In this document: positions 39,901-61,461 of the stretch, piece after piece
Layout: every line of letters starts with the position of its first letter
Position numbering within the stretch: the stretch's first letter is position 1
Origin: Mytilus californianus
Taxonomy: Eukaryota
Assembly (NCBI RefSeq): GCF_021869535.1
Contig: NW_026262712.1
Coordinates: 9,176,001-9,240,000, forward strand
Length of the DNA: 64,000 nucleotides
Reading direction: 5' to 3'
Notes under the pieces: generated by a model
Database searches by the model: none
What the model was told of the DNA's origin: nothing
The model's input: the letters and a program-made list of their open reading frames with translations, nothing else
Translations under genes and position numbers: made by a program

Positions 39901-40090
39901 ATTATATTATATGTCCAACCACGTAAACTTGTTTATGTTTTTGTCAACAAATGATGGTTGATCTAATCTTGACCTTTTAGTTGATGCCATTTAAAATGAC
40001 AGGGATTATGACATCTAACCTACCTTGTGTATAAATATATATATAAATATGACCTTTTTATGATCATAATTTACATAAATGTATTTACAG

Positions 40091-40199
40091 ATTTTTAGCA
40101 GTTGTTTGGTAACTAATACATCACCAGATTCAGATGACGAACTGGAAGATTTAGGTCTGCAGGAATTGCCTGAAAATACACCAAGATATATCACACACT
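40091..40199 (+). CDS. Internal coding exon (phase 0 to 1), acidic low-complexity peptide IFSSCLVTNTSPDSDDELEDLGLQELPENTPRYITH
   Basis: TTTACAG acceptor, GTGAGT donor, and an open frame in phase with the donor at 38315. Confidence 0.7.
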
Positions 40200-40294
40200 G
40201 TGAGTAGCTTTATTATGTGAAAGGGGACTGTTAAAAGGGGGCTTGAAAATATAGGAAGGTTTAATGTAGTTAAATGTCAAAATAGCATATTTTT

Positions 40295-41110: not shown

Positions 41111-41594
41111 ATTTTTTGTTTCCATTTTTAACCGGATTTTCAAAGGAAATATCGGTTATTAAAATGGTTATGTACGGCAGGCGGCTGGGCGGCTCTTGCG
41201 GCTGCCAAATAACATGAAAACGCTGTAACAAATTTTTTTCAAATTTAAATATGTTGTTTCCTGGGACTTAATGAAGGTCTCTATTAATTTTCAAGATTTT
41301 AGTATATCTCCTTTGTGAGTTATCTTCATTTTTAATATCCAAAAGTAGAATTTTTAAATATTTTACTGTTGTTATCTTTTTATGATTTGTCTTATCTCAG
41401 AATAAAAATTGGAGTGACAGATTTATTTGAAAATTATCTATTTCCTAAGTGGTAATGATTATAAGCTATATCATTAGACATTTTGAAGATTATTACATTA
41501 TTAATTATGTTAGAGTACTATGTTAAACAACCATAGTTCTGTTAAATTAGATATTATAAATATTTCAGCATATGATAATGATTTTTTTTGTTGA

Positions 41595-41838
41595 AAACTT
41601 GTAAACAGTCAAGATCCCCACCCTTAAACCATATATATTCTTGTATGTTACAATAAAACAAATCAAATGAAATAAAAATCAAGTACCCTGGGGTCATCCC
41701 CACCTTCTTTCTGTTTAAGAACTTGTAAACGGTCGAGATCCCCACCCCAAAAATATAAATATTCTTGTATGGGACAATAAAACTAATCAAATGACATATA
41801 GGGAAGTCCATTGGGGTAACCCCTACCCCCCTTTTTTT
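41595..41838 (+). repeat. ~120-bp satellite S (left part, split by host element H2)
   Basis: Unit ACTTGTAAACGGTCAAGATCCCCACCCCTAAACCATATATATTCTTGTATGG... It resumes at ~52910. Confidence 0.8.
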
Positions 41839-42740
41839 AGCTCACCGGGGCCCAAAGGGCCCCATGTGAGCTTATGCCATCACTTGGCGTCCGTCGTCTG
41901 TCGTCGTAAACTATTTCAAAAATCTTCTTCTCTGAAACTACTGGGCCAAATACCTTCAAACTTTAATTAAATGTTCCTTAGGGTATCTAGTTTATAAATT
42001 GTATCCGAAGTTTTGATCCATCGACAAATATGGCCGCCATGGCTATAAATAGAACATAGGGGTCAAATGCAGTTTTTGGCTTATATCTCAAAAACTAAAG
42101 CTTTTAGAGCAAATCTGGCATGGGATAAAATTGTTCAGTTGGTCAAGATCTATCAGCTGTGAAATTTTCAGACGAATCAAACAACCCATTGTTGGGTTGC
42201 TGCCACCGAATTGGTAGTTTTAACAAAATTTTGCAGTTTTTTGTTATTATTTTGAATATTATTATAGATATATATAAACTGTAAGCAACAATAATGTTCA
42301 GCAAAGTAAGATCTACAAAAAAGTTAATATGACCATAATTGTCAATTGACCCCTTAAGGAGTTATTGCCCTTTAAAGACAATTTTACACAATTTGTTCAT
42401 CAAGTTTGCTAACATTTAAAAATCTTCTCCTCTGAAACTACTGGGCCAATTACCTTCAAACATTAACTTAATGTTCCTTAGGGTATCTTGTTTATAAATT
42501 GTATCCGAAGTTTGTATCCATCAACAAACATGGCCGCTATGGCTAAAAATAGAACACAAGGGTCAAATGCAGTTTTTGGCTTATATCTCAAAAACTAAAT
42601 CTTTTAGCAAATGTGACGCGGGGTAAAATTGTTCAGTTGGTCAAGATCTATCAGCTCTGAAATTTTCAGACAAATCGAACAACCCATTGTTGGGTTGCTG
42701 CCGTCGAATTGGTAGTTTTAACAAAAATTTTACAGTTTTT
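41839..42740 (+). mobile_element. HINE-like host element H2, 5' part (~500-bp core repeat, 1.6 copies)
   Basis: 5' end AGCTCACC followed by GGGCCCAAAGGGCCC and GTGAGC. The second core copy stops at TTTTACAGTTTTT. Confidence 0.85.
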
Positions 42741-45700
42741 ATACGATCACAAAAAAATTTTTGTGGTCGTATATTGGTATGACATTGGCGTCGTCGTCGT
42801 CGGCGTCGTCCGAAGACACATTGGTTTTCGCACTCTAACTTTAGTTTAAGTGAATGGATCTCTATGAAATTTTACCACATGGGTCATTACCACAAAAGGA
42901 AGGTAGGGATTGATTTTGGGGGTTATGGTACCAACAGTAAAGGAAAAAGGGGCCAAAAATAAGCATTTTTGTAACTTCCAGACATAACTTGTGTGTTAGT
43001 GTATGGATCTCTCTGACATTGTACCACAAGGTTCCATATCACAAAAGGAATGCTGGGATTGATTTTGGGGGTAATTGCCTCAAAATTTTAGGAATTAGGG
43101 GCCAAAAAAGGGGCAAAAAACAAGCATTTTTCTAGTTTCATGACAATAACTTGTGTTCAAGTGTATGGATCTCTCTGAAATTGTACTGCAAGGTACCATA
43201 CCACAAAGGGAAGGCTGGGATTGATGATGGGGGTAATTGCCTCATTATTTTAGGAATTAGGGGCCAAAAAGGGGCAAAAAACAAGCATTTTTGTGGAGCC
43301 TGCGACTTTTGTCGCAGAAAGCTCGACATAGGGATAGTGATCCGGCGGCGGCGTTAGCTAACTTCTTAAAAGCTTTATATTTTAGAAGGTGGGAGGTCTG
43401 GATGCTTCATACTTTGTATATGGATGCCTCATGTTACGAAGTTTCCGTCAGTCACATGTCCAATGTCCTTGACCTCATTTTCATGGTTCAGTGACTACTT
43501 GAAAAAAAAGTTAAGATTTTTTGTAATGTTAGATTCTCTCTTATTATAAGTAATAGGATAACTATATTTGGTATGTGCGTACCTTGCAAGGTCCTCATGC
43601 CCGTCAGACAGTTTTCACTTGACCTCGACCTCATTTCATGGATCAATGAACAAGGTTAAGTTTTGGTGGTCAAGTCCATATCTCAGATACTATAAGCAAT
43701 AGGTCTAGTATATTCGGTGTATGGAAGGACTGTAAGGTGTACATGTCCAACTGGCAGGTGTCATCTGACCTTGACCTCATTTTCATGGTTCAGTGGTTAT
43801 AGTTAAGTTTTTGTGTTTTGGTCTGTTTTTCTTATACTGTATGCCATAGGTCTTCTATATTTGGTGTATGGAATGATTGTAAGGTGTACATGTCTAGCGG
43901 GCAGGTGTCATCTGACCTTGACCTCATTTTCATGGTTCAGTGGTCAAAGTTAAGTTTTTGAGTTTTGGTCTTTTTTTCTAATACTATATGCAATAGTTCA
44001 ACTATATTTGGTATGTGCGTACCTTGCAAGGTCCTCATGCCCGTCACACAGTTTTCACTTGACCTCGACCTCATTTCATGGATCAATGAACAAGGTTAAG
44101 TTTTGGTGGTCAAGTCCATATCTCAGATACTATAAGCAATAGGTCTAGTATATTCGGTGTATGGAAGGACTGTAAGGTGTACATGTCCAACTGGCAGGTG
44201 TCATCTGACCTTGACCTCATTTTCATGGTTCAGTGGTTATAGTTAAGTTTTTGTGTTTTGGTCTGTTTTTCTTATACTGTATGCCATAGGTCTACTATAT
44301 TTGGTGTATGGAATGATTGCAAGGTGTACATGTCTAGCGGGCAGGTGTCTTCTGACCTTGACCTCATTTTCATGGTTCAGTGGTCAAAGTTAAGTTTTTG
44401 AGTTTTGGTCTTTTTTTCTAATACTTTATGCAATAGGTCATCTATATTTGGTGTATGGAAATATTTTATGATGTACCTATCAGTCTTGCAGGTTTTATTT
44501 GACCTTGACCTCATTTTCACGGTTCATTGCTCAGTGTTAAGTTTTTGTATTTTGGTCTGTTTTTCTAATACTATAAGCAATAGGTCAACTATATTTGTTG
44601 TATGGAAGGATTGCAAGCTGTATTACATGTCTGCCTGGCATTGTTCATCTGACCTTGACCTCATTTTATTGGTTCATTGGTCAATGTTTAGTTTTCTTGG
44701 TTAAGTCTGTATCTTAGAAACTATAAACAATAGGTCAACTATATTTAGTGTATTGAATGATTGTAAGGTGTACATGTATTTCTTGTTTGGTTTATATGAC
44801 CTTGACCTCATTTTCTTGGATCATGTTAAGTGTATGTGATAGTTGTAGTAAAGCTTTATATTTAGGACTATCAACATAATATCAATGATTAGTAAAGAAG
44901 GCGAGACATTTCAGCCTGTGCACTCTTGTTCTAGTTTCAGGACAATAACTTGTGTGTAAGTGTATGGATCTTTCTGAAATTGTACTACAAGGTTCCATAT
45001 CACAAAGGGAAAGCTGGGTTTGAGTTTGGGGGTAATTTCCCTAAATGTTTAGGAATTTGGGGCCAAAAAGGGGCCAAAAAACACATTTTTCTAGTTTCCA
45101 GACAATAACTTGTGTTCAAGTGTATGGATCTCTCTGAAATTATACTGCAAGGTACCATACCACAAAGGGAAGGCTGGGATTGAGTTTGGGGTGATGAATC
45201 ATAAGGGGGTTGAAAAAATTTGGGGGGGGGATTTTTTTTTTTTCCTTTTTTTTCTTTTTTTTCTTTTTTTTTCCTTTTAAAATTTTCCATTTTAAGTTGG
45301 TTATTTCTGATTTATATTTAAAAGCAAATAATAATGATATGGTAGGAGATACACACCAAACAGGATGTGTAAATTATTATATAATAAGTATTGTGCAATA
45401 GCAAGAAATTTTCAATTGTACAGTATTGCACAATAGCAAGAAATCTTCAATTGCACAGTATTGCGCAATAGCAAGAAATCTTCAATTGCACAGTATTGCG
45501 CAATAGCAAGAAATATCCAATAGCACAATATTGCGCAATAGCAAGAAATTGTCAAAATTGTACAGTATTGCGCAATACCAAGAAATATTCAATTGCACAG
45601 TATTGTGCAAAAGAAGATACTTCATATAAATTGCTTATTTCTTGACCAATTTCAATGGGGTTTTATTCTTGAATTCTTGGGGTTCTTTAATATGCTGAAT

Positions 45701-46388
45701 CTAACCGTGTATTAAGTTTTTGGAATTTGGGCCCCGTTTTTAAATTGGTCCACATTGAGGTCCAAAGGGTTCAAAATTAAACTTTGTTTGATTTCATCAA
45801 AAATTGAATTATTGGGGTTCTTTGATATGCCGAATCTAACCATGTATTAAGATTCTTAATTTTTGGTTCCGTTTTCAAATTGATCTACATTAAGGTCCAA
45901 AGGGTCCAAAATTAAACTTAGTTTGATTTTAACAAAAATTGAATTCTTAGGGTTCTTTGATATGCTGAATCTAAACATGTATTTAGATTTTTGATTATGG
46001 GCCCAGTTTTCAAGTTGGTCCAAATCGGGGTCCAAAATTAAACTTTGTTTGATTTCAACAAAAATTGAATATATGGGGTTCTATGATATGCTGAATCTAA
46101 CCATGTATTTAGATTTTTGTTTTTTCGGCCCCGTTATCAACTTTGTCCACATTGAGGTCAAAAGGGTTTAAAATTAAACTTTGTTTGATTTCATCAAAAA
46201 TTGAATTCTTGGGGTTCTTTGATATGGTGAATCTAACCATGTATTTAGATTTGGGTTATTGGACCAATATTTAATCACAATACAAATTCAGAGCTGTATC
46301 AAGCTTGAATGTTGTGTCCATACTTGCCCCAACTGTTCAGGGTTTGACCTCTGCGGTCGTATCAAGCTGCGCCCTGCGGAGCATTTTA
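42741..46388 (+). mobile_element. HINE family E, copy E3 (with nested element H3)
   Basis: 5' ATACGATCAC...GTGGTCGTATA palindrome and 3' TGCGGTCGTATCAAGCTGCGCCCTGCGGAGCATTTTA. Same internal arrays as E1 and E5. Confidence 0.87.
43293..44928 (+). mobile_element. HINE-like element H3 nested in E3
   Basis: Splits CAAGCATTTTT|CTAG in an E3 core unit. 5' GAGCCTGCGAC-TTTT-GTCGCAGAAAGCTC hairpin, ~137-bp GACCTTGACCTCATTTTCATGG repeats, 3' AGGCGAGACA. Confidence 0.85.
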
Positions 46389-46910
46389 TTAAAATTTTAA
46401 TAACTTTCTTATACTATTTTGGATTTGTACCAAACTTGGACAGAAGCTTGTTTATGATCAAAAGCTAGTATCTAGAAGGAAATTTTGTAAAAAAAATAAA
46501 TCCGTTTTTTCCGTATTTTACTTTTAAATGGACTTAGATTTTCTGCCAGGAAACAACATATTCACTCTGTGGTTAAAGTTTTTAAAATTTTAATAACTTT
46601 CTTATACTATTTTGGATTTGTACCAAACTTGGACAGAAGCTTGTTTATGATCAAATGCTAGTATCTAGAAAGAAATTTTGTTTTCTTCCAGTTAACATTA
46701 CATTCAGTCTGCAGTTAAAGTTTTTAAACATTTATTAGATTCATAAACTATCCTGGATTTTTACCAAACTTGGACAGAAGCTTCTTACAATCAAAAGATA
46801 GTATCGAGAGGAATATTTTTATTGATTTACCTTCTCATTTTTGTTGAGCCTGCGATTAACAGAAAAAGTAGGCGAGACACTGGGTTCCTCTGAACCCTTA
46901 CGAATTTTTA
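46389..46910 (+). mobile_element. Orphan 3' half of another HINE-like element (H4)
   Basis: Two core units AAAATTTTAATAACTTTCTTATACTATTTTGGATTTGTACC and a 3' end with AGGCGAGACA. No 5' half is present upstream. Confidence 0.7.
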
Positions 46911-47414
46911 AACATCATAAGAAAAGTTTTTCAGAAAATGTGAATATTAGTTAATTCTTTGTGACACTGACTGTGACATCTTTGATTGAAGTGACGTCAG
47001 AAGAGAGATTTGTCAAATTCTTATCTAAAAAGTAAGAATGTTTTGGCTAAGTTTAACTTAGAGCACAAATGTTGCCCAAAATAATCTTGTTCCAGTGAAA
47101 AGTTAAACACAAAGTAAACTAACTTTTTAAATATCTTTTTTGGAGACGGTTTTGCTATTTATTTTCTCTAATTTTTGTGCTATTTTCACATTTCTTGATC
47201 GGTGTGAGAAAAATATTTCTCCTCACTAGTGAAATATCTGTTCTCGGCAAATGATTGGTCAAAATTTAATTATGATGTAAAATTTTCTTGGTTTCCTCTG
47301 AATTTCCTATCGTGACGTCATGAAAAAAGGCGACCATGCCTGATGACGTCACATATAAAGAACACAACATTCTGCAAATCTTTGAAAAGGAAGGATAAAA
47401 ATCATTAGAGAAAC

Positions 47415-47575
47415 AGATTCTACCACTATAAATCGTGAATTACGATATTTCTCCACTCTCAGCAGTTAAATTTTGATTATTTAAAAAGCTCGGCAAGCCT
47501 TGTGCTTTAAATATTAAAATTAAACTGTCTCGAGTGGAGAAATATCGTAACAAACTTGTTGCAGTGGTGGAATCT
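47415..47575. repeat. Foldback (MITE-like) inverted repeat
   Basis: AGATTCTACCACT...TTACGATATTTCTCCACTC pairs with GAGTGGAGAAATATCGTAA...AGTGGTGGAATCT. Confidence 0.7.
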
Positions 47576-47893
47576 ATATATTTCTAACCATGAACAAGTC
47601 AAATAGTCAAGATTTTCAAAATTTCACCATTTAACTGAATTGACTGCCATTTCATGGCTGTTACTATTATAGGTATAGAACCACTAATTCGGGACGGTCA
47701 GAAGGAACAAAAAATTGCATGAAAGAAGTACATATTTTAAACAAAATTGTTCCTATGCATAGCTGTAACTTTGTCAATAAGTAAAATATTTGGAAAATTT
47801 TGGTATCAAATATATGACAGGTGCACAGACTGGCTGTATCTTCAAATCCCTCTTACTTCAAGGCCAACTTATTTCTGTTTTTATTTTTCTCAG

Positions 47894-48077
47894 GATCAGG
47901 AGGCAGCAGTGTATTTGGTTACATTGTAGACGGACATTTCCGTGGAACCATCAGAATCCCACAGGACACTACATATCATATAGAACCAGTAAAACGATTC
48001 ATTGGTAGAGTCAAGTTACTTCCTAAATCACATACTATTATTTATAAGGAGGAACATATAGATTTAGATCCACACAG
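47894..48077 (+). CDS. ADAM10: ADAM10/Kuzbanian-like exon A (prodomain; phase 1 to 2)
   Basis: SGGSSVFGYIVDGHFRGTIRIPQDTTYHIEPVKRFIG...SHTIIYKEEHI resembles the ADAM10 prodomain (SVIDGRFEGFI...FYVEPAERYI...HSVIYHE). TTTTTCTCAG acceptor, GTAATA donor. Confidence 0.88.
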
Positions 48078-48356
48078 GTAATATGAATACCAGCTACTGT
48101 GGCCAAACAAAACAATACTTACTCATGGTTTGATTTGTCGCTTTTTTTACACACTAATCCTCACCCTTTACATTCTAGGAGTGGAAGCTCTACTGCTTCA
48201 TTACAAATATTTCTGTCACACTTTTATCAAGTACTGCTTAACAGAAAGCCATCAAATTTGGTCAGCAGCTTCAAGGTGATGAGTTGTAATGTGTGAGCAC
48301 TGTTCAGATCTGTCGAGACATTTACATCCTGTTTGCGGATACTTAGAATTTTTCAA

Positions 48357-49073
48357 TACCGTATAGCGGGTAATTTTCGCTTATTATGGTGGTTAAATGA
48401 AAATCGCAAAAATAAATTCTGCCAAAATTTATATACATATGCATACGTTCAGTACTTCCTAATAGGTAAAGCATTTTGTGAACAATCTATTTCTTTCTGG
48501 TAGGCAGGTTGATAACTGTATATGTTAGTTTTAACAACTAACATGCCAAAGGGTATTGTTCATATATGTATTTTCTAAAATGAGGTCGTGAGTTCTAATT
48601 AAACTGTAAACCCTTATTAATTAGTGTCAAATAATTAAATAGTGCAAGGTACTCTGTCAGGTATTTTACCCTTATTAATTAGTGTCAAATTATAAAAGAG
48701 TTGTCAGTTCACTCTTGATAATTTTATAACCTAATCAGTACATCAAAGGTACGGTCAATTTCTTAACTAATCAACTGTAACATTTACAAGTAGTTTGTAC
48801 ACCTGTGACAAATATCTAAGTTACCAGTATTCTTTTGATTAACTGTACCAGAATATAATCAATAAATAAGACGTCAATCAGGTAGAAAAAATATTTTATC
48901 ATTACAATATTTGATTCACTTTTGTTTACTGCAACCATTTCAGTATCCACCAAAATATTTAATTGGCAATTAAGAATCCACCAAAAATAAAAACCGCCAA
49001 AATTTTTTCGTATACTTATTTGCCCCTAAATAGCGAAATTTTACACCCGCGAAAAAACACCCCCTTTAGGGTA
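48357..49073. mobile_element. Probable TA-flanked MITE in an ADAM10 intron
   Basis: Imperfect terminal inverted repeats TACCGTATAGCGGGTAATTTTCGC and GCGAAAAAACACCCCCTTTAGGGTA. Confidence 0.5.
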
Positions 49074-49179
49074 TGTTAATTGAACTGAACTGAATTTCAG
49101 CTTGTGGTATAACAAAAGGTACATTCATTTTTAACAATGTGCAATAAACAAATCAGTACAAAAAACCCCACTTAATATA

Positions 49180-49305
49180 AAAAGCAGAAAATGTGGTATG
49201 ATTGCCAATGAGACAACTCTCCACCAGAGACCAAATGACGTAGAAGTTAACAATTATAGGTCACTGTACAGCCTTCAACAATGAGCAAAACCCATACTGC
49301 ATAGC
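49180..49305 (+). repeat. Short dispersed repeat (SINE-like fragment)
   Basis: ATGTGGTATGATTGCCAATGAGACAACTCTCCAC... is recalled as a common mussel interspersed repeat. Not verified by search. Confidence 0.45.
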
Positions 49306-49465
49306 AAATTAAAAAAAATAACACTATTATGAACAAAGACATGAAAGACACATTTTGAAATAAATGACTAATCAACAATATATCCAATTATGTCTGTTGC
49401 AGTACATACTCTACTGATATACCATCCTTTACTAGTTATGTCATCATCGATTTATATTATTATAG

Positions 49466-49583
49466 GTTAAGAAGAGAAGCAGAAAATGCAGTTGCTTCTT
49501 GTGGAAATGGTAACAGGCAAGTTCATGAATGGATGGAAACTGTTGCTAATTCAGCTGACACAGAAAACTACAGAGTCAGAAGG
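49466..49583 (+). CDS. ADAM10: ADAM10-like exon B (cysteine-switch region; phase 2 to 0)
   Basis: LRREAENAVASCGNGNRQVHEWMETVANSADTENYRVRR, with AG/GT boundaries in phase with exons A and C. Confidence 0.8.
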
Positions 49584-50445
49584 GTAACTGCAATTAGTTT
49601 TGTCCATATTATAAAATTCCTAGAAAAGATAGATTCAGTAAACTGTGCCACTTGCTGGAGGATGAAAACACTTCCTCCTAGAATGTAAAATCATTAAAAA
49701 TTTTAGGGAAAATCCATAGGAAAATATTTCATCTGTTATACCTTATTTTAAAGGTTTATATAAAGAAAAGAAAGAATGTTTTGAGCTGAACTGTTCTTTT
49801 ATTGCTAAAATATATGAAATGCAGAATAAAATGTTCGACATAAAATGAATAGTTATGATGAAAATAATACTTTACAAAAAATAAAACTTAGTCTGGATAG
49901 AGAATTTTATTTGGCTTCTCATTACTTCTTTTCATGAAAATGCTTTACTAAATTGAGAATTTGTGACCATAATCTAGAAATAGAGAAGGGTGGCTATTAT
50001 AAAATTCCTAGAAAGGATAAACTCAGTAAGCTGTGCCACTTGCTGGGGGATGAAAACACTCCCTCGAATGTAAAATCAACAAAACATATATGGACAATTC
50101 ATTGGAAAATTGCTTACCTACTAATAATTTTATGTTTTTCACTAAAGAACAAAGGATGAAAGAAATTCTCAACCCTTCTACGATGGAACTTACAAAGTTA
50201 TTGGCTCCTTTTTAAAACAGTCATTAAAACTGAGGGCAGAAGTTAAATAATTGTTCATGTTTTCAGTTACTATCAATTAAAATTTTATTTCTTTGTTATA
50301 TTTTGTTTTTATTCTTTGTCACCAACAGTCACATGTCAATATTACAATAAAGTACTGCTGTACTATGATGCTTTAAGCAAATCTTCAGCAAACATAATTA
50401 GGTAAACTTTAGTAAGTAGTTATATGAGATTTACTTTTTTTTCAG

Positions 50446-50601
50446 TCCTACTCTGAAGATAAAGAAGACTTTTCCTACCATAACAAATATTCTGAAGTTC
50501 TGAACAGACAGAAGCGTGGAACACTTGTTGGTAAAAATGCATGTTTCCTATTCATGCAGGCAGATCCTAAATTATACAACAAGGTTTTTTCAGCTTATAA
50601 T
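50446..50601 (+). CDS. ADAM10: ADAM10-like exon C (furin site RQKR and start of metalloprotease domain; phase 0 to 0)
   Basis: ...VLNRQKRGTLVGKNACFLFMQADPKLYNKVF resembles ADAM10 LLRKKR...KNTCQLYIQTDHLFF. TTTTTCAG acceptor, GTAAGT donor. Confidence 0.88.
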
Positions 50602-51293
50602 GTAAGTAAAATGCTATATGGTGATTTGATTTTTTTGGTTATGTGGGGATGGGGAAGGGGAGAGGAAGAAGAGGATTAAAACTAACCAGCAGTCAATATG
50701 CACTACTTGACACCTGCTTATTTCTTATGTTCTGTAGGTTGCACAAACCACACCTCTTTTGGGGAGTTATATAATATCCATAGATAAATTGTTTTGTTTA
50801 CATACTGGATCCCAGATATGATCTCTATGTTTTATCTCATATAGACATAACTTAGGAATGTTACCAGTATAAATAAAAAAAATATATATAGCGTCAGCCT
50901 TGAATTCTGAGGGAGACCAAAAGTGAAGGTAGGGGTTGTACAGAATTTAAATACAAGTTAAAACTCTTAGAAGTTCATATAAATGTTGAAAATATGCCGC
51001 ACAGCCCTTTATTTTGACCTTTGAAAAAGTAGTAGTGCATATGAGCTTTCCATTCTAGGATATACTTTTTTTCAAAACTTTATAGTAAAAGTGGCACAGT
51101 TTTAGCTGTAAAAGGAGTTCCTATGGGAAATGGCATTGTCTGTATTTACAGAAATGCAACCTGTAGTGAGCACAACAGTGTGTTTTCTCAGATGGCATCA
51201 TTAGCGCAATTGGCTTAACTTAAAGGGCAGCCTTTATTTCAGCAACAAATAATCCATGCATTGAAGCAATCTCAAAATCAGTACATATTTGCC

Positions 51294-51506
51294 TACTGAG
51301 GATTCATTTATTTTTGTTAGTAACAATCTTCATGGATTGAGAAAAACTTGCATGTTAGTTGAAAATTGATTTCACAGTTTTGCCAAGTTCTGCATACAAA
51401 GCCTAAAGAAAATTTGTAATTTGTTGAACATTTAAATTTGTGGTTCACTTAAATTCACTAAAGCCACATTAATTGGTATCCAAGGAATAATAATGAATCC
51501 GCAGTA
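51294..51506. mobile_element. TA-flanked MITE
   Basis: TACTGAGGATTCATTTATT ... AATAATAATGAATCCGCAGTA terminal inverted repeats. Confidence 0.7.
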
Positions 51507-51717
51507 TTTGAGAAAAATTTATTGAAAACTGTCACAAAATGTTAAAATTGCCTGTGCACTTAAATAAAATTGCAGATAAAAATGTACATCATTAGTCACA
51601 ATCAACTGATCTTATATTTTTTTAAGCAAATATACTTTTTATATAAAAAACTGAAAGTAAAAGAGAATATATATAAAAGAAAAGTGGTTGTATCAACATT
51701 AACATTTATCTTTGCAG

Positions 51718-51864
51718 AATGATGTGTTAGCTAAAGAAGATATTGTAGGAACATTTGCATCCCATGTTGATGCCATTAACACCATCTACTCAAACACAGT
51801 GTTTAAAACATTTGACAACTCAATAAACTACTCAGGAGTAAGATTTAAAATCCAGAGAACTAAA
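51718..51864 (+). CDS. ADAM10: ADAM10-like exon D (metalloprotease N-terminal part; phase 0 to 0)
   Basis: NDVLAKEDIVGTFASHVDAINTIYSNTVF...SGVRFKIQRTK resembles ADAM10 [37 protein letters not shown] acceptor, GTGAGT donor. Confidence 0.88.
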
Positions 51865-52028
51865 GTGAGTACAAATTAGAATTTACGGTAGCAAGTCAGC
51901 AAACTAGGGTAAAGTATCAGAGAGTAAATTTGAAAGGCAGTTATAGGAACTGAATGTTGGTGTTTATGAAACCAAATTCAGATGCTGTTAATTAAGACAT
52001 TTTGCATGCATTTATTATTATGATTTTT

Positions 52029-52675
52029 ATACAACCGCAAAAATTAAAATTTTTTATATATGACCGTAAAACTTAAAAATTTTTTGGTCGTATATTGGTA
52101 TCACGTTGTTGTCGTCGTCAGCGTCTTCCGAAGACAGATGGTTTCCAGATAATAACTTTAGTATAAGTAAATAGAAATCAATAAAATTTTAACACAAGGT
52201 TTATAACCACTAAAGGAAGGTTGGGATTGGGAATAAGGGAAAGGAGGGAGGTGAAAAAAATTGGAGGGGGGGGGGGACAATTTTTCTCATTTCAGATTTC
52301 AGAAATTAAAAGAAAATTTCTTCAAAGATTTATTTTGGGGGGTTAATATTCAACAGCATAGTGTATTGCACAAAAGCAAAAAACCAGGGTAAAATAATTT
52401 TTTTTTGGTTAGGTGGGGGGGGGGGGGGGGGTCAATTCGCAACAGCATAGTGTATTGCACAAAAGCAATAAATTGAATATAAATTCAAATCATATAACCA
52501 ATTTGAAGTTCTTTGACTACAGTTATTCTGTGTCAGAAACCTATTATGTGTCAAAAATTTAGTTACAATCCAAATTCAGACCTGTATCAAGCATGAATAT
52601 TGTGTCCATTTTGGCCCAACTTTTCAGGGTTGGACATCTGCGGTCGTATCCAGCTGCGCTCAGCGAAGCAATTTA
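52029..52675 (+). mobile_element. Short internally deleted HINE family E, copy E4 (doubled 5' end)
   Basis: ATACAACCGCA... then ATATGACCGTA...GGTCGTATA at the 5' end. 3' end TGCGGTCGTATCCAGCTGCGCTCAGCGAAGCAATTTA. Confidence 0.82.
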
Positions 52676-52909
52676 TTTGTTATTATTTTGAATATTATTA
52701 TAGATATATATAAACTGTAAGCAGCAATAATGTTCAGCAAAGTAAAATCTACAAAAAAGTTAATATGACCAAAATTGTCAATTGACCCCTTAAGGAGTTA
52801 TTGCCCTTTAAAGACAATTTTACACAATTTGTTCATCAAGTTTGCTAACATTTAAAAGTCTTCTCCTCTGAAATGCAGGTGAGCGATTCAGGCTCTTGAG
52901 AGCCTCTTG
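52676..52909 (+). mobile_element. Host element H2, 3' part
   Basis: Continues the H2 core exactly where it stopped at 42740 (compare 42241-42430). Ends with subTIR GGTGAGC and hairpin AGGCTC-TTGA-GAGCCT. Confidence 0.85.
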
Positions 52910-53220
52910 TTTGATAACTTATAAACGGTCAAGATTCCCACCCAGAAACCATATATATTCTTGTATGGAACAATATATCAAATCAAATGAAATATAGGGG
53001 AAGTCCACGGGGGTAAACACTACCCCCTTCTTTTTTGAAAACTTGTAAACGGTTAAGATCCCCACCCCTAAACCATATATATTCTTGTATGGGACAATAA
53101 AATAAAGCAAATTAAATTTAGGGGAAGTCCCCTGGGGTAGCCCCTACTCTCCTTTTTTTTTGAAAACTTGTAAACGGTCAAGATCCCCGCCCCTAAACCG
53201 TATATATCCTTGTATGGGAC
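52910..53220 (+). repeat. Satellite S (continuation after H2)
   Basis: ~120-bp units resume at GATAACTTATAAACGGTCAAGAT. Confidence 0.8.
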
Positions 53221-53704
53221 AAAAAAACAAATCATATGAAATAAAGGGCAGGTCCCCTTGGAAAATTAATCAGTTTGTGTGTGTTATATTTGAACATAGA
53301 TTAAATATATATAGGGTTCTTTCAAGTGCTGAATCTGATCTTGTTTTTAATTAGATAATAATCTATTTTTATTATGAGATAAAGTTTTTGACATTGATAG
53401 ATAAGTTGCAGATCTGTATTATTTTTTTACAGATGAAAGAAACAATATTAGCAACTATTAATTAAATTTGATTATAATATGGAGATAGATATAACATCAT
53501 ATCTGATTTTAGAGAAGTATTTTGCTGGTTTTTTACTGGTTTATGGAAATAAGTTTGAGTTATTTGTTTTGAAAAGTGATGTGTTTAATTGATAGATATA
53601 AAATCATATCTAATTTTAGAGATTTATGAGTGGTTAAGTCACATCTAAATTTAGAGAATTATTTTGGTGTTTTGTTACTGGTTCATGGAAATAAATTTGA
53701 GTTT

Positions 53705-54069
53705 TATCTTGTAAACGGTCGAGATCCCCACCCCTAAACCATATATATTCTTGTATGGGACAATAAAACAAATCAAACGAAATATTGGGGGAGTCCCCGG
53801 GACCACCCCCACCCCCTTCTTTTTGAAAACTTGTAAACGGTCAAGATCCCCACCCTGAAACCATATATATTCTTGTATGGGACGATAAAACAAATCAAAT
53901 GAAATATAAGGCGAGTCCCTTGGGGTCACCCCCACCCCATCCTGTTTGAGAACTTGTAAACGGTCAAGATCCCCACCCCTAAACCATATATATTCTTGTA
54001 TGGGACAATAAAACAAATCAAATGAAATATTGGGGGAGTCCCCGGGACCACACCCACCCCCTTCTTTTT
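53705..54069 (+). repeat. Satellite S, three further units
   Basis: Same ~120-bp unit. It ends at the T-run where E5 is inserted. Confidence 0.8.
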
Positions 54070-56291
54070 ATACGACCGCAAAAATTTTTGCGGTCGTATA
54101 TTGGTATGACGTCGGCATCGTCGTCGTCGTCCGAAGACACATTGGTTTTCGCACTCTAACTTAAGTTTAAGTAAATGGTTCTCTATGAAATTTTACCATA
54201 AGGTTCAATACCACAAAAGGAAGGCTGGGATTGATTTTGGGGGTTATGGTACCAACAGTTAAGGAATTAGGGGGCCAAAAATAAGCATTTTTGTAACTTC
54301 CAGACATAACTTGTGTGTTAGTGTATGGATCTCTCTGACATTGTACCAAAAGGTTCCATATCACAAAGGGAATGTTGGGATTGATTTTAGGGGTAATTGC
54401 CTCAAAATATTAGGAATTAGGGGCCAAAAAAGGGGCAAAAAACAAGCATTTTTCTAGTTTCATGACAATAACTTGTGTGTAAGTGTATGGATCTTTCTGA
54501 AATTGTACTACAAGGTTCCATATCACAAAGGGAAAGCTGGAATTGAGTTTGGGGGTAATTGCCCAAAATGTTGAGGAATAAGGGGCCAAAAAGGGGCAAA
54601 AAATAAGCATTTTTTCTAGTTTCCAGACAATAACTTGTGTTCAATTGTATGGATCTCTCTGAAATTGTACCACAAGGTTCCATATCACACAGGGAATGCT
54701 GGGATTGATTTTGGGGGTAATTGCCTCGAAATTTTAGGAATTAGGGGCCAAAAAAGGGGCAAACAACAAGCATTTTTCTAGTTTCATGACAATAACTTGT
54801 GTGTTAGTGTTTGGATATTTCTGAAATTGTACTACAAGGTTCCATATCACAAAGGGAAAACTGGAATTGAGTTTGGGGGTAATTGATCTAAACGTTTAGG
54901 AATTGGGGGCCAAAAAGGGGCCAAAAAACACATTTTTCTAGTTTCCAGACAATAACTTGTGTTCAAGTGTATGGATCTCTCTGAAATTGTACTGCAAGGT
55001 ACCATACCACAAAGGGTAGGCTGGGATTGAGTTTGGGGGTGATGAATCATAAGGGGGTTAAAAAAATTGGGTTTTTTTTTGTTTTTTTTTTTCCTTTTTT
55101 TTTCTTTTAAAATTTTCCATTTTAAGTTGGTTATTTCTGATTTATATTTAAAAGCAAATAATAATGATATGGTAGGAGATACACACCAAACAGGATGTGT
55201 TAATTATTATATAATAAGTATTGTGCAATAGCAAGAAATTTTCAATTGCACAGTATTGCACAATAGCAAGAAATCTTCAATTGCACAGTATTGTGCAATA
55301 GCAAGAAATCTTCAATTGCACAGTATTGTGCAATAGCAAGAATCCAATAGCACAATATTGCGCAATAGCAAGAAATTGTCAATTGTGCAGTATTGCGCAA
55401 TTGCAAGATATATTCAATTGCACAGTATTGTGCAAAAGAAGATACTTCGTATAAATTGCTTATTTCTTGACCAATTTCAATGGGGTTTTATTCTTGAATT
55501 CTTGGGGTTCTTTAATATGCTGAATCTAACCGTGTATTAAGTTTTTGGATTTTGGGCCCTGTTTTTAAATTGGTCCACATTGAGGTCCAAAGGGTCCAAA
55601 ATTAAACTTTGTTTGATTTCATCAAAAATTGAATTATTGGGGTTCTTTGATATGCCGAATCTAACCGTGTATTTAGATTCTTAATTTTTGGTTCCGTTTT
55701 CAAATTGGTCTACATTAAGGTCCAAAGGGTCCAAAATTAAACTAAGTTTGATTTTAACAAAAATTGAATTCTTAGGGTTCTTTGATATGCTGAATCTAAA
55801 CATGTATTTAGATTTTTGATTATGGGCCCAGTTTTCAAGTTGGTCCAAATCGGGGTCCAAAATTAAACTTTGTTTGATTTCAACAAAAATTGAATATATG
55901 GGGTTCTTTGATATGCTGAATCTAACCATGTATTTAGATTTTTGATTTTTGGGCCCATTATCAACTTTGTCCACATTGAGGTCAAAAGGGTCCAAAATTA
56001 AACTTTGTTTGATGTCATCAAAAATTGAATTCTTGGGGTTCTTTGATATGCTGAATCTAACCATGTATTTAGATTTTGGATATTGGACCATAATAGGTGA
56101 ATGTCCAATTTAAAATTTTTAAGTTCTTAGACCACATTCATTCTGTGTCAGAAACCTATGCTGTGTCAAATATTTAATCACAATTCAAATTCAGAGCTGT
56201 ATCAAGCTTGAATGTTGTGTCCATACTTGCCCCAACTGTTCAGGGTTCGACCTCTGTGGTCGTATCAAGCTGTGCCCTGCGGAGCATTTTA
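54070..56291 (+). mobile_element. HINE family E, copy E5 (full length)
   Basis: ATACGACCGCAAAAATTTTTGCGGTCGTATA 5' palindrome, ~160/35/130-bp arrays, 3' GCTGTGCCCTGCGGAGCATTTTA. Confidence 0.87.
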
Positions 56292-56916
56292 TTATATTTA
56301 GTTTGTAAACAGATTTACTAAGTATTGTGCAACAGCAAAGTATTGCACAACAGCAAGAAATCTTCAATAGAAAATAAATATAAATCTTTTAACCAATTTC
56401 AATGAGGATCAATTTAAAGTCTTGAATTGTTTGAGGTTGATACCATGTATTACTATATTGGATATTTGGACATTTTGAAATAGGTCTACATTGAGGTCCA
56501 AGTGTTCCAAAATTAGACTTTGTTTGACTTCATCAAAAACTGAATTCTTGTGGTTCTATGCATGATATGCTGAATCTAACTGTGCATTCAGATTTTTAAT
56601 TTTGGGCCCTGTTTTCAAATTAGTCCATATTAAAGTCCAAAGGGTCCAAAATTAAACTTTGTTCAAATTCATGGTTTTTTTTTATATGCTGAATCTAACC
56701 TTGGATATTGGATCATTAAGTAGATTAAATGCCCCATTTCAAATTTTTAAGTTATCTGACCACATTTATTCTGTGTCAGAAATCTATAATGTGTCAAATA
56801 TTTAATCACTATCAAAATTCAGAGCTGTATCAAGCTTGAATATTGTGTCCATACTTGCCCCAACTGTTCAGAGTTCGACCTCTGCAGTCGTATCCAGCTA
56901 CTCCAGGCGGAGCGTA
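56292..56916 (+). mobile_element. Diverged 3' half of an E-related HINE (E6)
   Basis: Degenerate 130-bp units and 3' module CAGAGCTGTATCAAGCTTGAATATTGTGTCC...TGCAGTCGTATCCAGCT. No 5' half. Confidence 0.7.
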
Positions 56917-57885
56917 TTTTTGTCAACATATAAGTATAATTTGGAAATTAAATCTAGTTATATGTTGGCGAACGTTTTGTAATAAAATTTTATATGAAAC
57001 AGTGTAATACATTGCTCAAGGTTGTAATTGGGTAAACATGATTTCTTTACACCAGTCATGTTTTTCACACCAATGTGTGCAATGATTTTTTGCGCTTTAG
57101 AAATCATTTGTGGAGGTTTGTGATTAAAAAATTTCCTGACACAAAGTCATTGTATTAATAAAGGATCCACTGTTTTCTAATCACTGAAATTTGTGACGTA
57201 CTGCAATTTGTGTTCTTTGACATCGCTAATTGATCGTAACCCGAATATTTTAGGCCCTTCCCATAATCAATTTCTCCTACCTGCAATGTAACTTAGCCAT
57301 CTTAGATCAACTTAATTAATCTTGTAGAACTACTAGAAGAAATATGAAAACCATGTCAATTTTTGCAATAGGAAATTTTGTATGAAATTATAAACAAAAA
57401 AATCCCGAAACTGTAAATTACAATATGTTGTTAATAAGTTTCCAATAGAGATAATCTAAAATCATTGATCTTTTGAAATATTGATCTTGTCTCCCTTTAA
57501 AATTTCAAGAGAATATATTTCACCAAATATTTTAGATATTCATTTAAAGAAAGCTTTGTAGCATGCATAGAAAAACATCTTCCATTTAAGAAGAAATAAT
57601 TCAAACAATTAAATTTGGACATTTCTTGAGCAATTCAAAAAATTATTATGTCTCATCTTACTGATTACTCTTTACAATACAGATTTTCAAAATAACAATG
57701 AAGTGGAATTAAAGTCTAGTATATATATACGTAGGATTAAAAGTATGTTTTATTGAAAATCGGCAGAAGGCCTACAAGTATTGTCCACCCCCCTTTTGAA
57801 TGGAGTTCTTCTTAGACTATTTGAAGGATTGTTTGCCATAATGCGTTAAGACCATATTATACTGCCATTTTGATTTGACTATTTT

Positions 57886-59347: not shown

Positions 59348-60272
59348 ATACGCCCGTTTACGGGACGTATTATGGTATACCGTATGTCCGTCGTCAACAT
59401 GTCGAACATTAATTCAAAAATGCTTTAACCAATATGCATGAAACTTTGGTGAATTGTTTATATCTATTGACGTGAGCTCCCTTTCGTTTTTTATAAATTT
59501 CAGATTTACCATTTCCGGGTTTTGGGGTTTTATTCATTAAAAAAGGGGGGATTTTCCAGTTTTCGGACAATAACTCAAAAAAATTTCACCAATTTGCATG
59601 AAACTTTTGTGAATTGTTCATATCTATTGACGTGAGCTCTCTTTCATTTTTTATAAATTTCTGAGTTACCGTTACCGAGTTTTGGGGTTTTATTCATTAA
59701 AAAAGGGGGGATGTTCCAGTTTTCAGACAATAACTCAAAAACAATTTCACCAATTTGCAAGAAACTTTGGTGAATTGTTTATTTCTATTGACATGAGCTC
59801 CCTTTTGATTTTTATAAATTTCAGACTATATGTTTCCCATTTATGGGGTTTTATTCATTACAAAAAGGGGGATTTTCCAGTTTTCGGACAATAACTCAAA
59901 AATGCTTTCATCATTTTTTATGAAACTTTGGTAAATTGATTATATCTATTTTTTTAAGCTCCCTTTTGATTTTTATAAATTTTCGATTTTACGTTTCCGA
60001 GTTATAAGATTTTATTTGTTTATAGTCTGACAACAGATTTACTAAGTATTGCGCAACAGCACAGTGTATTGCACAACAGCAAGAAATCTTTCATATAACC
60101 AATTTCATGTTCTTTGACTACATTTATTCAGAAACCTATAATATATCAAATATTAAATTACAATCCAAATTCAGACCTGTATCAAGCTTGAATATTGTGT
60201 CCATTTTTGCCCCAACTGTTCAGGGTTGGACCTCTGCGGGCATATCCAGCTGCACTCAGCAAAGCAGTTTAT
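59348..60272 (+). mobile_element. HINE with variant subTIR, ~150-bp core and E-type 3' module
   Basis: ATACGCCCG at the 5' end and CGGGCATAT at the 3' end. It splits a host repeat at ATTCGATCATTTTT|...|GAGTTATGGGACTTT; an intact version of that repeat is at ~60428-60460. Confidence 0.75.
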
Positions 60273-61321
60273 TACTTGAGTTATGGGACTTTAACCTTTT
60301 TTTTGCACTATTGTACCACAATGACCCTTGTGAACTCAACTCTTTTGAGACTGTTTGACAGAAAAATCTCATACTTAGGATTGTTTGCCTTGATGTGTAG
60401 TTGAAAATATTGTACTGTCATTTTTTGATTCGACCATTTTTATAGGAGTTATGGGACTTTGATCATAATTTACATGCAGCAGGGCCCTCTGTGATGGCTG
60501 GCATCACTTTCCTTTAGTTACTGTTAACATAAAGATCACTCTCATTGTGACTTAAATCACTTTAAGTAAAAGGTCAAACTAAATATTGAATATGTTAGCA
60601 GTGATGAACACAAGACTTTTCTGTCAGAATTCCCTTTACTTTGTTTTCAATATCTATAAAAATGGACCTGGATGAAACCAGGGCCCAAATGGAAAAGAAC
60701 ATGTGTTATAATCTATTTATCACATATTATACAAATGCTTAAAAAAAGTACGAAGAATTTTATTGTTCTGTCTAGGAAGATCATACATTTTTTATCCTCC
60801 ATTGAAATAACTTTATTATAACGAAGTTATTTTCAAAACTATAGTCCTTGAATATTAAAATGTCAATGTCAGATTTTTCTTTATTTCTTTAACAAATACC
60901 GCTGTCTTTTTAATTGACATTCCCCATCCTTCATTGTTATTAGGAATGTTTATGACGTCATAACAGGGCACAATAACCGGTTATTTGCCCTGGTCAGGAA
61001 TATGACAAGGGCAAATCTGCAGGTATTGCATATGCAAAACCCTATGTTTCTTAACAAATATGTGATAAAACAGTTCATTGCAGAAAAGGTTTGGAGGAAA
61101 CTGTGGTTAAGAATATTATATTTTATAAAGATAAACTATGCAAAGTATTTGCATTTTAATCACAATAATTCTAACTGAAAAGCAACTATTTGTTTGACTC
61201 TTAACTGTTATCTTTAATGTCAGGCTTTAGTTAACAAAATTTCTGTTCAATAAAACAACTGTTGTCCTCAAACCAAGTAAATAACTGTATAATAATATTT
61301 CATTATGTTATATATGTACAG

Positions 61322-61461
61322 TTGATTAAACAGAAGAGAGAGGAAGAGGGATCGTCTCAGTCATACTCAATGATGTCATCACAGATGCCTGTTATGTGCC
61401 GTTATGGTAGGGCATGTACAAGGAAAGGCTGCCGATTTAGACACGAGACTGACTTGAAGAG
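61322..61461 (+). CDS. Coding exon with a CCCH zinc finger (phase 0 to 2)
   Basis: LIKQKREEEGSSQSYSMMSSQMPVMCRYGRACTRKGCRFRHETDLK (C-x5-C-x4-C-x3-H). TACAG acceptor, GTATGT donor. Confidence 0.7.

What the first reader, a model, noticed from the sequence alone, without database searches (positions are those of the whole stretch)
42741..52675. Composite Helentron-like macro-transposon that captured four ADAM10 exons
Seen: host element H2 stops at ...CAGTTTTT (42740) and resumes 9.9 kb later at TTTGTTATTATTTTGAAT (52676), at the same T-run as in its intact first unit (~42231-42260). The block between begins with the 5' end of HINE E3 and ends with the 3' hairpin of a different copy, E4. E3's own 3' flank is an orphan half of another element (H4) whose other half is absent. 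E4's 5' flank is ADAM10 intron. Each E copy therefore has one flank from a donor locus and one from this locus. The junction gains 2 T (8 vs 6), as do the simple insertions. Inference: rolling-circle transposition started at E3, bypassed its terminator, copied 5.6 kb of an ADAM10 gene and ended at E4. End-bypass gene capture is an established Helitron model; here two non-autonomous siblings act like a bacterial composite transposon.
Basis: partly seen in the sequence, partly recalled or inferred. Interest (0 to 1): 0.9.

Follow-up and report, generated by a model that had tools for sequence, protein, structure and literature searches.

The report
Two-element rolling-circle transposon carrying ADAM10 exons
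In the California mussel genome, a 9.9-kb block bounded by the start of one small rolling-circle transposon and the end of another has carried four intact ADAM10 exons into an intron of an unrelated gene; this is a clean example of a gene-capture route that was already proposed and has one documented case in bats.

Summary
The window is Mytilus californianus GCA_021869535.1, scaffold JAKFGE010000006.1. A 9,937-bp block (42741-52677) splits a repeat element, H2, at one T-run.

- **Outer ends.** The block starts with the 5' end of E3 (42741-46390) and ends with the 3' end of E4 (52029-52677). Both are Helentron-type non-autonomous elements (HINEs). The outer junctions have the same TTTTT^ geometry, without target duplication, as the simple insertions E1 and E2, whose empty sites lie in the window.
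- **Cargo.** Between E3 and E4 lie 5.6 kb of ADAM10 locus: the 3' half of an intronic HINE (H4) and four exons (about aa 103-305) with intact frames and splice sites.
- **True gene elsewhere.** The complete ADAM10 gene is on another scaffold of the same assembly. The block sits in an intron of LOC127706963.
- **Inner junctions.** Each is a half of a canonical insertion site whose other half is absent from the window.

One-piece insertion by terminator bypass (composite rolling-circle transposition) is the best explanation (about 0.6).

The native ADAM10 allele carries neither E3 nor E4 and is about 5% diverged, so the donor is not in hand. E4 is a diverged relative of E3, not a close sibling. 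The mechanism was already proposed for HINEs and documented once in bat Helitrons, so this is a new member of a known kind. The scan had already noted this same stretch (s1-302839).

The parts
41839..42740 (+). H2, left part. This is the host element, itself a HINE of another family. It has a 5' AGCTCACC sub-terminal repeat, a palindrome, a GTC microsatellite and 500-bp repeat units. It is inserted in a T-run of a 123-bp satellite.
42736..42740 (+). T5 target run immediately 5' of the block. The intact first unit of H2 has T6 at 42236-42241.
42741..46390 (+). E3, a long-type HINE. Features in order: 5' palindrome 42741-42772, GTC microsatellite, 162-bp repeats, 35-bp and 135-bp repeats, 3' sub-terminal repeat 46353-46362, hairpin 46366-46382. 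Its last ~125 bp differ at one base (TTTGACC vs TTCGACC) from E1; the terminal 44 bp, with subTIR and hairpin, are identical.
43293..44925 (+). Nested insertion inside E3 of another tandem-repeat-carrying element ('T147': 5' GTGGAGCCTGCGAC..., 3' ...GGCGAGACA...CTCTTGT). It is placed after a TTTTT run of an E3 repeat unit.
46391..52028 (+). Captured ADAM10-locus segment (5,638 bp). It is collinear with the native M. californianus ADAM10 gene (L001 24221-30629) at 86-95% identity.
46391..46909 (+). 3' half of H4, a HINE resident in the native ADAM10 intron. It starts exactly at the GTTTTT^AAAATTTTAAT site of an H4 repeat unit. The H4 5' end is absent from the window.
47894..48078 (+). ADAM10 exon (aa ~103-164 of XP_052097566). 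61 of 62 residues are identical to the native protein, and AG/GT splice sites are kept.
49466..49583 (+). ADAM10 exon (aa ~165-203), open frame, splice sites kept.
50446..50601 (+). ADAM10 exon (aa ~204-255), open frame, about 6 residue changes versus the native protein, splice sites kept.
51718..51863 (+). ADAM10 exon (aa ~256-305, start of the metalloprotease domain), open frame, splice sites kept.
51985..52028 (+). E4's 5' flank: a short repeat motif ending in TGATTTTT^. In other loci the motif continues past the T-run with sequence that is absent from the window.
52029..52677 (+). E4, a short, diverged HINE of the E group. Its 5' palindrome is degenerate or duplicated. Its 3' end is intact, with sub-terminal repeat 52640-52649 and hairpin 52653-52669. 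This end is the outer 3' end of the block.
52678..52912 (+). H2, right part. It is 98% identical to 42240-42437 and ends with the 3' sub-terminal repeat GGTGAGCG plus the palindrome AGGCTCTTGAGAGCCT.

Best explanation
The 9,937-bp block is a compound rolling-circle transposon, made and moved in one event.

Proposed sequence of events:
1. At a donor ADAM10 locus, E3 had inserted into a TTTTT^A site of the intronic HINE H4. This donor was an allele or copy not present in the primary assembly.
2. At the same donor, E4 sat about 150 bp downstream of the exon encoding aa 256-305, in the same orientation as E3.
3. A Helentron transposase supplied in trans nicked at E3's 5' end and peeled off the strand.
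4. It failed to stop at E3's sub-terminal repeat and hairpin, ran through 5.6 kb of ADAM10, and stopped at E4's terminator.
5. The single-stranded product was pasted after the fifth T of a T6 run in H2, inside an intron of LOC127706963.

Shown: the anatomy, the ectopic position, the single-insertion geometry, the orphan half-sites and the parental locus. Inferred: the bypass itself, the existence of a donor carrying both E elements, and that the elements are mobilised by a Helentron.
For: - **Family insertion rule.** E1 and E2 have empty sites in 6-7 sister units of the macrosatellite. The element is exactly ATACGACC...TTTTATT, inserted right after TTTTT with no target duplication or loss.
- **Same rule for the block.** The block's two outer junctions obey this rule against H2's own intact unit and more than 25 other H2 units.
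- **Inner junctions.** Each is a canonical half-site. E3's 3' flank starts at GTTTTT^AAAATTTT of H4, a site that is uninterrupted at L001 24220. E4's 5' flank ends in TGATTTTT^. Only 0.9% of positions in this region follow TTTTT. The partner halves are absent from the window.
- **Genome and parental gene.** The window is 100% identical to JAKFGE010000006.1. The complete ADAM10 gene is on JAKFGE010000025.1.
- **Shared lineage marker.** The captured piece shares the lineage-specific H4 insertion with that gene.
- **Host gene.** Host-gene exons lie at 37955-38314 and 40085-40204.
- **No mosaicism.** E3 is long-type and E4 is E4/E6-type over their whole lengths.
- **Precedent.** Terminator bypass with transduction is shown experimentally for Helraiser (PMC4778049). 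Composite transposition is documented for HelibatN539 (PMC4224331) and proposed for HINEs (PMC4067079).
- **Assembly quality.** The assembly is 45x HiFi with read N50 14 kb (PMC9710001), so both E elements are spanned by single reads.
Against: - The only ADAM10 locus found in the assembly has neither E3 nor E4 at the predicted positions.
- That locus differs from the captured piece by about 5% in introns, by dS 0.22 in exons, and by several large indels. No donor has therefore been seen.
- E3's terminator is identical to that of apparently functional copies, so nothing forced a bypass.
- No second copy of the block and no allelic empty site could be looked for.
- No autonomous Helentron with matching termini was examined.
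- The last 96 bp before E4 cannot be shown to be ADAM10 intron.
Confidence: 0.6

Rival explanations
1. Ectopic homologous repair. A simple E element already sat in the H2 T-run. A break inside it was repaired from a donor ADAM10 locus flanked by two E copies, one end invading E3 and the other E4, so the 5.6 kb between them was copied in. An equivalent route is an excised circle integrating by recombination.
For: - It gives the same final anatomy.
- E elements are very dense (at least 7 in 64 kb), so templates abound.
- The outer junctions would be those of an ordinary insertion.
Against: - It needs the same unseen donor plus a pre-existing element.
- E4 shares only about 200 bp at the 5' end and about 175 bp at the 3' end with long-type E copies, at 77-87% identity. 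That is poor substrate for homologous recombination.
- E4's differences from the young type run to its last bases, and E3's 5' end is of E5/E2 type, so no mosaic tract is visible.
- None of more than 25 other H2 units carries an E at this site.
Confidence: 0.12
2. Single-element read-through plus a later hit. E3 bypassed its terminator and stopped at a cryptic site ending in ...TGATTTTT. The E3-plus-ADAM10 element was inserted in H2, and E4 later inserted independently into the T-run formed at the right junction.
For: With E4 removed, the right junction reads GA-TTTTTT-GTTATT. That is a T6 run in which the family's TTTTT^T rule would place a new insertion exactly at the junction. Cryptic terminators are the commonest outcome of bypass in Helraiser assays (PMC4778049).
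Against: - It requires a second, independent hit in this one T-run.
- E4 is the most diverged E copy seen (best match 86.6%). This fits an old resident rather than a later arrival.
- The sequence before E4 looks like a repeat truncated exactly at its T-run, as expected if E4 had inserted into that repeat at the donor.
Confidence: 0.1
3. Assembly chimera. The assembler walked from the H2 locus through a shared E repeat into an ADAM10-like locus and back through another E repeat.
For: E is a high-copy repeat. The captured piece matches no other locus in hand exactly.
Against: - Two wrong joins would have to restore H2 to the base.
- E3 (3.6 kb) and E4 (0.65 kb) are far shorter than the 13-14 kb HiFi reads at 45x (PMC9710001).
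- The window has no N.
- The captured ADAM10 piece differs by about 5% from the native gene, so it is a separate sequence that must lie somewhere.
Confidence: 0.04
4. Filler-DNA capture. E3 and E4 were adjacent insertions in the same T-run, and a 5.6-kb ADAM10 piece was pasted between them by end-joining or templated repair.
For: Filler-DNA capture is one of the published models for Helitron gene capture (cited in PMC4224331).
Against: Both ends of the ADAM10 piece coincide with canonical TTTTT^ insertion sites, one of them verifiable in the native H4. The chance is about 0.009 per end.
Confidence: 0.02
5. This is the native ADAM10 locus with nested insertions.
For: The exons are intact, in order and on one strand.
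Against: - The complete gene is on another scaffold.
- No exon for aa 1-102 or beyond aa 308 is in the window.
- The flanks are the two halves of H2 and the exons of another gene.
Confidence: 0.01

Closest known systems
HelibatN539 compound Helitron in vesper bats (Thomas et al. 2014, PMC4224331) and the Tempel et al. 2007 end-bypass model
   Same: The 5' end of one rolling-circle element and the 3' end of another in the same orientation moved the host gene segment between them (KCNQ5 in bats, ADAM10 here).
   Different: - In bats the parental locus with both flanking ends was found; here it was not.
- The bat elements are canonical Helitrons; these are Helentron-type HINEs in a mollusc.
- Here both inner termini and both orphan half-sites are preserved, and the cargo is four splice-competent exons.
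HINEs: DINE-1 of Drosophila, Cg_HINE of Crassostrea gigas, pearl/CvE/MgE of bivalves (PMC4067079, PMC7492417)
   Same: - 5' sub-terminal repeat with a complementary inverted repeat.
- GTC-type microsatellite.
- Central ~160-bp tandem repeats.
- 3' sub-terminal repeat followed by a short palindrome.
- Oligo-T target with no target duplication.
   Different: Those papers describe simple elements. Composite rolling-circle transposition is only suggested there, as a possible cause of DINE-1-associated gene duplications, and no case is shown.
Helraiser read-through transduction (Grabundzija et al. 2016, PMC4778049)
   Same: The 3' hairpin acts as terminator, and bypass carries downstream DNA to a new site.
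   Different: That is an experimental system with a canonical Helitron. There termination is at cryptic sites; here it is at a genuine second terminator.
IS91 / ISCR one-ended transposition in bacteria (from general knowledge, not tested here)
   Same: A rolling-circle element misses its terminator and mobilises adjacent DNA.
   Different: The system is prokaryotic with HUH transposases of another lineage.

Membership tests
HINE (Helentron-associated interspersed element), for E3/E4 | 5' sub-terminal inverted repeat with a nearby complementary inverted repeat | tested here: met
   ATACGACCGC...GCGGTCGTAT forms a perfect hairpin (E3 z = -6.2, E5 z = -7.2). It is degenerate or duplicated in E4.
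HINE (Helentron-associated interspersed element), for E3/E4 | 3' sub-terminal repeat complementary to the 5' one, followed by a short palindrome close to the 3' end | tested here: met
   GCGGTCGTAT lies 28-37 nt from the end, and a palindrome GCTgCGC-loop-GCGxAGC ends 8 nt from the end. Both are conserved in 8 copies. The related E6 changes both the 5' repeat (ATACGCCCG) and the 3' repeat (GCGGGCATAT) together. The single hairpin folds are weak (z -1.2 to -2.1).
HINE (Helentron-associated interspersed element), for E3/E4 | Microsatellite plus central tandem repeats between the two end modules | tested here: met
   A GTC-type microsatellite follows the palindrome, then 162-, 35- and 135-bp arrays.
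HINE (Helentron-associated interspersed element), for E3/E4 | Insertion in oligo-T without target-site duplication | tested here: met
   Empty sites of E1 (7 units) and E2 (6 units) lie in the macrosatellite. All seven 5' flanks end in TTTTT.
HINE (Helentron-associated interspersed element), for E3/E4 | Termini shared with an autonomous Helentron encoding Rep/helicase (and endonuclease) | not tested
   No autonomous element was looked for.
Compound (composite) rolling-circle transposon | Outer ends are the 5' end of one element and the 3' end of another, in the same orientation | tested here: met
Compound (composite) rolling-circle transposon | The whole block sits as one insertion with the family's junction geometry at a site known in the empty state | tested here: met
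   The empty state is seen in paralogous H2 units (the neighbouring unit and more than 25 others), not in an allele.
Compound (composite) rolling-circle transposon | The cargo has a parental locus elsewhere in the genome | tested here: met
   L001 on JAKFGE010000025.1 is collinear at 86-95% and shares the H4 insertion.
Compound (composite) rolling-circle transposon | The parental locus carries the two elements flanking the captured segment | tested here: not met
   In the reference allele the E3 target in H4 is uninterrupted (L001 24220). No E lies after the last captured exon; a different HINE sits there. Other alleles and the alternate haplotype could not be examined.
Compound (composite) rolling-circle transposon | Further copies of the compound element (proof of mobility as a unit) | not testable with these tools
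   No tool searches the rest of this genome by DNA.
Functional ADAM10 gene | Complete exon series including the catalytic HExGHxxGxxH motif | tested here: not met
   Only aa ~103-305 are present. The zinc motif at aa 417 of the native protein has no counterpart in the window.

The most novel reading that the evidence does not exclude
This would be the first resolved case of composite rolling-circle transposition by Helentron-type HINEs. Two unequal non-autonomous elements moved a 5.6-kb, four-exon, splice-competent piece of a protease gene, in sense orientation, into an intron of another gene. That would make HINE pairs a working exon-shuffling vehicle in bivalves. It would also give a mechanistic basis for the long-noted association of DINE-1-like elements with gene duplicates.
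Probability: 0.55. Interest if true: 0.55.

Novelty: new member of a known kind. Interest (0 to 1): 0.45.

Why it matters
Gene capture by rolling-circle transposons is well catalogued, but the capturing event is rarely visible. Captured pieces are usually short and decayed, and the inner ends are lost.

Here both inner termini survive, together with both orphan half-sites, the parental gene, and an intact four-exon cargo in the sense orientation of a host intron. The bypass model can therefore be tested directly in one species with public HiFi reads and an alternate-haplotype assembly.

The case also extends the composite model from canonical Helitrons (bats, plants) to the Helentron/HINE branch, where it had only been suggested. 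That branch dominates bivalve and Drosophila repeat landscapes.

For mussel genomics, which is noted for massive presence/absence variation, this shows one way in which multi-kilobase genic segments are copied between chromosomes.

Tried and rejected
- **Native-locus reading.** Rejected. The window is 100% identical to JAKFGE010000006.1, and the complete gene is on JAKFGE010000025.1.
- **Donor search through proteins.** A protein-database search with the ORF spanning the E3/H4 junction gave only two partial, E-only matches. Exact look-ups of that ORF and of the first exon ORF found nothing on record. The isoform X2 proteins P0039 and P0065 were not on record either.
- **Pfam on short ORFs.** Scans of single exons and neighbouring ORFs gave no family. 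ADAM10 identity rests on the representative-protein search and tblastn.
- **T147 as a link to ADAM10.** I considered that the T147 array inside E3 came from the ADAM10 intron, because L001 has a 92-95% copy between the third and fourth captured exons. The L001 and L003 copies have different flanks, so T147 is simply another dispersed element.
- **M. trossulus paralogues.** I asked whether the captured piece descends from a second ADAM10 paralogue like the two in M. trossulus. The exon-by-exon affinities are mixed and the counts too small to decide.
- **Relaxed selection on the captured exons.** The window branch has 5 synonymous and 6 non-synonymous changes, against 7 and 2 on the native branch. 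This is suggestive only.
- **Earlier scan notes.** Searches by place near the finding and by the words Helentron/HINE returned nothing.

Full report
**Where the window comes from**

The ADAM10-like ORFs led to Mytilus proteins. A 401-aa ORF of the upstream macrosatellite matched two M. californianus proteins. The locus of one of them, L006, is 100% identical to window 20058-44517 over 24,460 bp. The window is therefore GCA_021869535.1, scaffold JAKFGE010000006.1, about 9,176,001-9,240,000. This is a hifiasm assembly of 45x HiFi reads (read N50 14 kb) from an animal with 2.73% heterozygosity (PMC9710001). The window contains no N.

**The E family and its insertion rule**

Self-comparison finds these E copies:

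| Copy | Coordinates | Strand | Note |
|---|---|---|---|
| E1 | 14863-16780 | - | simple insertion |
| E2 | 27756-29755 | - | simple insertion |
| E3 | 42741-46390 | + | left end of the block |
| E4 | 52029-52677 | + | right end of the block |
| E5 | 54070-56293 | + | not examined for an empty site |
| partial copy | about 56471-56925 | + | 5'-truncated |
| E6 | 59348-60275 | + | related family |

A full copy has these parts:
- a perfect 5' palindrome, ATACGACCGC-loop-GCGGTCGTAT (z about -6 to -7);
- a GTC-type microsatellite;
- 162-, 35- and 135-bp tandem repeats;
- a 3' GCGGTCGTAT followed by a small hairpin and ...TTTTATT.

This is the architecture defined for HINEs, the non-autonomous partners of Helentrons, and for the bivalve pearl/MgE/Cg_HINE elements (PMC4067079 and PMC7492417).

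E1 and E2 lie in a 2.6-3.2-kb macrosatellite whose other units supply empty sites. For E1, AGTTTTTTCATT becomes AGTTTTT[E1]TCATT. For E2, CAGATTTTTCCTTATG becomes CAGATTTTT[E2]CCTTATG. The element is thus exactly ATACG...TTATT. It inserts right after TTTTT, with no duplication or loss.

**The block as a single insertion**

H2 is itself a HINE of another family. It has a 5' AGCTCACC, a palindrome and a GTC microsatellite starting at 41839, and a 3' GGTGAGCG plus palindrome ending near 52912. It carries 500-bp internal units and sits in a T-run of a 123-bp satellite.

Its second unit stops at ...ACAGTTTTT (42740) and resumes at TGTTATTATTTTG (52678). A chimera of 60 bp from each side aligns without a break to H2's first unit (94%). 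It also aligns to more than 25 H2-family units in the ADAM10 loci of M. californianus, M. trossulus, M. coruscus and M. edulis. The only gap is the two element-derived Ts that I had left on the right flank. None of those units carries an E at that run, so it is not a hot spot.

The geometry, five Ts, then the block, then one T, is the same as for E1. The block is 42741-52677, or 9,937 bp.

**What the block contains**

E3 is a long-type copy. Its last ~125 bp differ from E1's at one base (TTTGACC against TTCGACC), while the terminal 44 bp, with the subTIR and the hairpin, are identical to E1's. It carries a nested 1.6-kb element (43293-44925), inserted after a TTTTT of one of its repeat units.

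From 46391 the sequence is collinear with the native ADAM10 gene of the same assembly (L001, JAKFGE010000025.1). Identities by segment:

| Window segment | L001 segment | Identity |
|---|---|---|
| 46385-48358 | 24221-26198 | 94.8% |
| 49072-49330 | 26197-26451 | 85.8% |
| 49431-49601 | 26631-26801 | 93% |
| 50308-50636 | 27452-27769 | 85.7% |
| 51701-51881 | 30449-30629 | 92.8% |

Four exons encode aa ~103-305 of the 854-aa protein. There is no stop or frameshift, and the AG/GT splice sites are kept. No other ADAM10 exon is in the window.

The first 519 bp (46391-46909) are the 3' half of H4. In L001, H4 is a complete 1-kb HINE (23742-24737) inserted at CACATTTTT^AAACATC. That site is empty in M. 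coruscus. The captured piece therefore descends from the M. californianus-lineage ADAM10 locus.

E4 is short (649 bp) and diverged. It is 77-81% identical to the other copies at its 5' end and 83-87% at its 3' end. Its 3' end resembles E6 along its whole length but keeps the E-type sub-terminal repeat.

**The inner junctions**

E3's 3' flank begins exactly at the GTTTTT^AAAATTTTAAT site of an H4 repeat unit. The same site is uninterrupted at L001 24220. E4's 5' flank ends in TGATTTTT^. Its last 44 bp resemble a short repeat that, in M. trossulus loci, continues past the T-run with sequence not found after E4.

The H4 5' end and the repeat's continuation are both absent from the window. Only 0.9% of positions in 38-64 kb follow TTTTT.

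Each E thus has one flank made by a canonical insertion somewhere else and one flank in H2.

**Ectopic position**

The block lies in an intron of LOC127706963, in the same orientation. Exons of XP isoform X2 (P0065) map to 37955-38314 and 40085-40204, and the remaining exons lie beyond the window.

**The donor problem**

The native locus has neither E3 nor E4. A different HINE, of the E6 family, sits about 45 bp after the fourth captured exon. L001 also lacks about 0.7 kb that the captured piece shares with M. coruscus, and its intron between the third and fourth captured exons is rearranged.

Exon divergence between the captured piece and L001 is dS 0.22 with dN/dS 0.10. This is as large as the divergence between L001 and M. 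coruscus. Intron identity is about 95% in both comparisons.

On the branch leading to the window copy there are 5 synonymous and 6 non-synonymous changes, against 7 and 2 on the native branch. This hints at relaxation after capture, but the counts are too small to test.

The donor was therefore a deeply diverged allele or a lost or unannotated copy, not the reference allele. With 2.7% mean heterozygosity, a 5% allelic difference is not extreme. This last point is inference.

**Mechanism and rivals**

Bypass of a 3' hairpin terminator with transduction of downstream DNA is shown experimentally for Helraiser (PMC4778049). Termination at a neighbouring element's 3' end is the Tempel model and is documented for HelibatN539 (PMC4224331). 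For HINEs it was proposed under the name 'composite rolling-circle transposition' (PMC4067079). The anatomy here fits that model point by point.

- **Homologous repair into a pre-existing E.** It needs the same donor plus an extra element. It would rely on about 175 bp at about 85% identity. I see no mosaic tract in E3 or E4.
- **Later, independent E4 insertion at the right junction.** This is geometrically possible, because removing E4 leaves a T6 run. It needs a second hit at that one run by the most diverged copy in the sample.
- **Assembly chimera.** It would need two wrong joins that restore H2 to the base, across repeats much shorter than the reads.

**Novelty**

A full-text search found 'composite transposition' together with Helentron only in the two 2014 papers. 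It found nothing on Helitron gene capture in Mytilus beyond a passing mention. This is a well-preserved new instance of a known mechanism in a branch of the superfamily where it had only been suggested. It is not a new kind of system.

Noticed in passing
window 1-38320: A macrosatellite of 2.6-3.2-kb units, 94-99% alike, with strong A and G skew. Each unit carries long ORFs (about 400 and 230-260 aa, with C2H2-like motifs). NCBI models several units as separate genes (P0064, P0065 = LOC127706963). E1 and E2 interrupt two units.
   Followed up: partly
window 41582-41838, 52913-54069, 63681-64000: Arrays of a 123-134-bp satellite flank H2 and E5. The same satellite lies in the native ADAM10 gene (L001 39184-40214) at up to 97-99% identity to window 63387-64000.
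   Followed up: partly
window 56471-56925 and 59348-60275: A 5'-truncated E-like copy lies 180 bp downstream of E5. E6 is a complete HINE of a related family. In E6 the 5' sub-terminal repeat (ATACGCCCG) and the 3' one (GCGGGCATAT) have changed together relative to E.
   Followed up: partly
L001 30655 onward (native ADAM10, M. californianus): An E6-family HINE sits about 45 bp downstream of the exon that is the last one captured in the window, after a GTTGTTTTT run. This intron is a repeated HINE target.
   Followed up: partly
window 47894-51863 versus L001, L004: Synonymous divergence (about 0.2) is roughly four times the divergence of the alignable introns (about 5%). This holds both between the captured copy and the native gene and between species. 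It is unexplained. Possible causes are that only conserved intron parts align, or that the few synonymous sites are hypermutable.
   Followed up: no
window 61262-61498 (+): A 78-aa ORF with a C-x5-C-x4-C-x3-H motif (MCRYGRACTRKGCRFRH). It is not part of P0065 and has no Pfam hit at E 0.01. It may be an exon of another isoform or gene.
   Followed up: partly
window 62876-63328 (-): A 150-aa ORF with no Pfam hit. It lies next to a long (TCT)n/(T)n tract at 63440-63520.
   Followed up: no
L002 and L003 (M. trossulus CM071706.1): There are two full-length ADAM10 genes 12.6 Mb apart on one chromosome. Only one full-length ADAM10 gene is annotated in M. californianus, plus a Glu-to-Gln 'ADAM10-like' paralogue (P0035).
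   Followed up: partly
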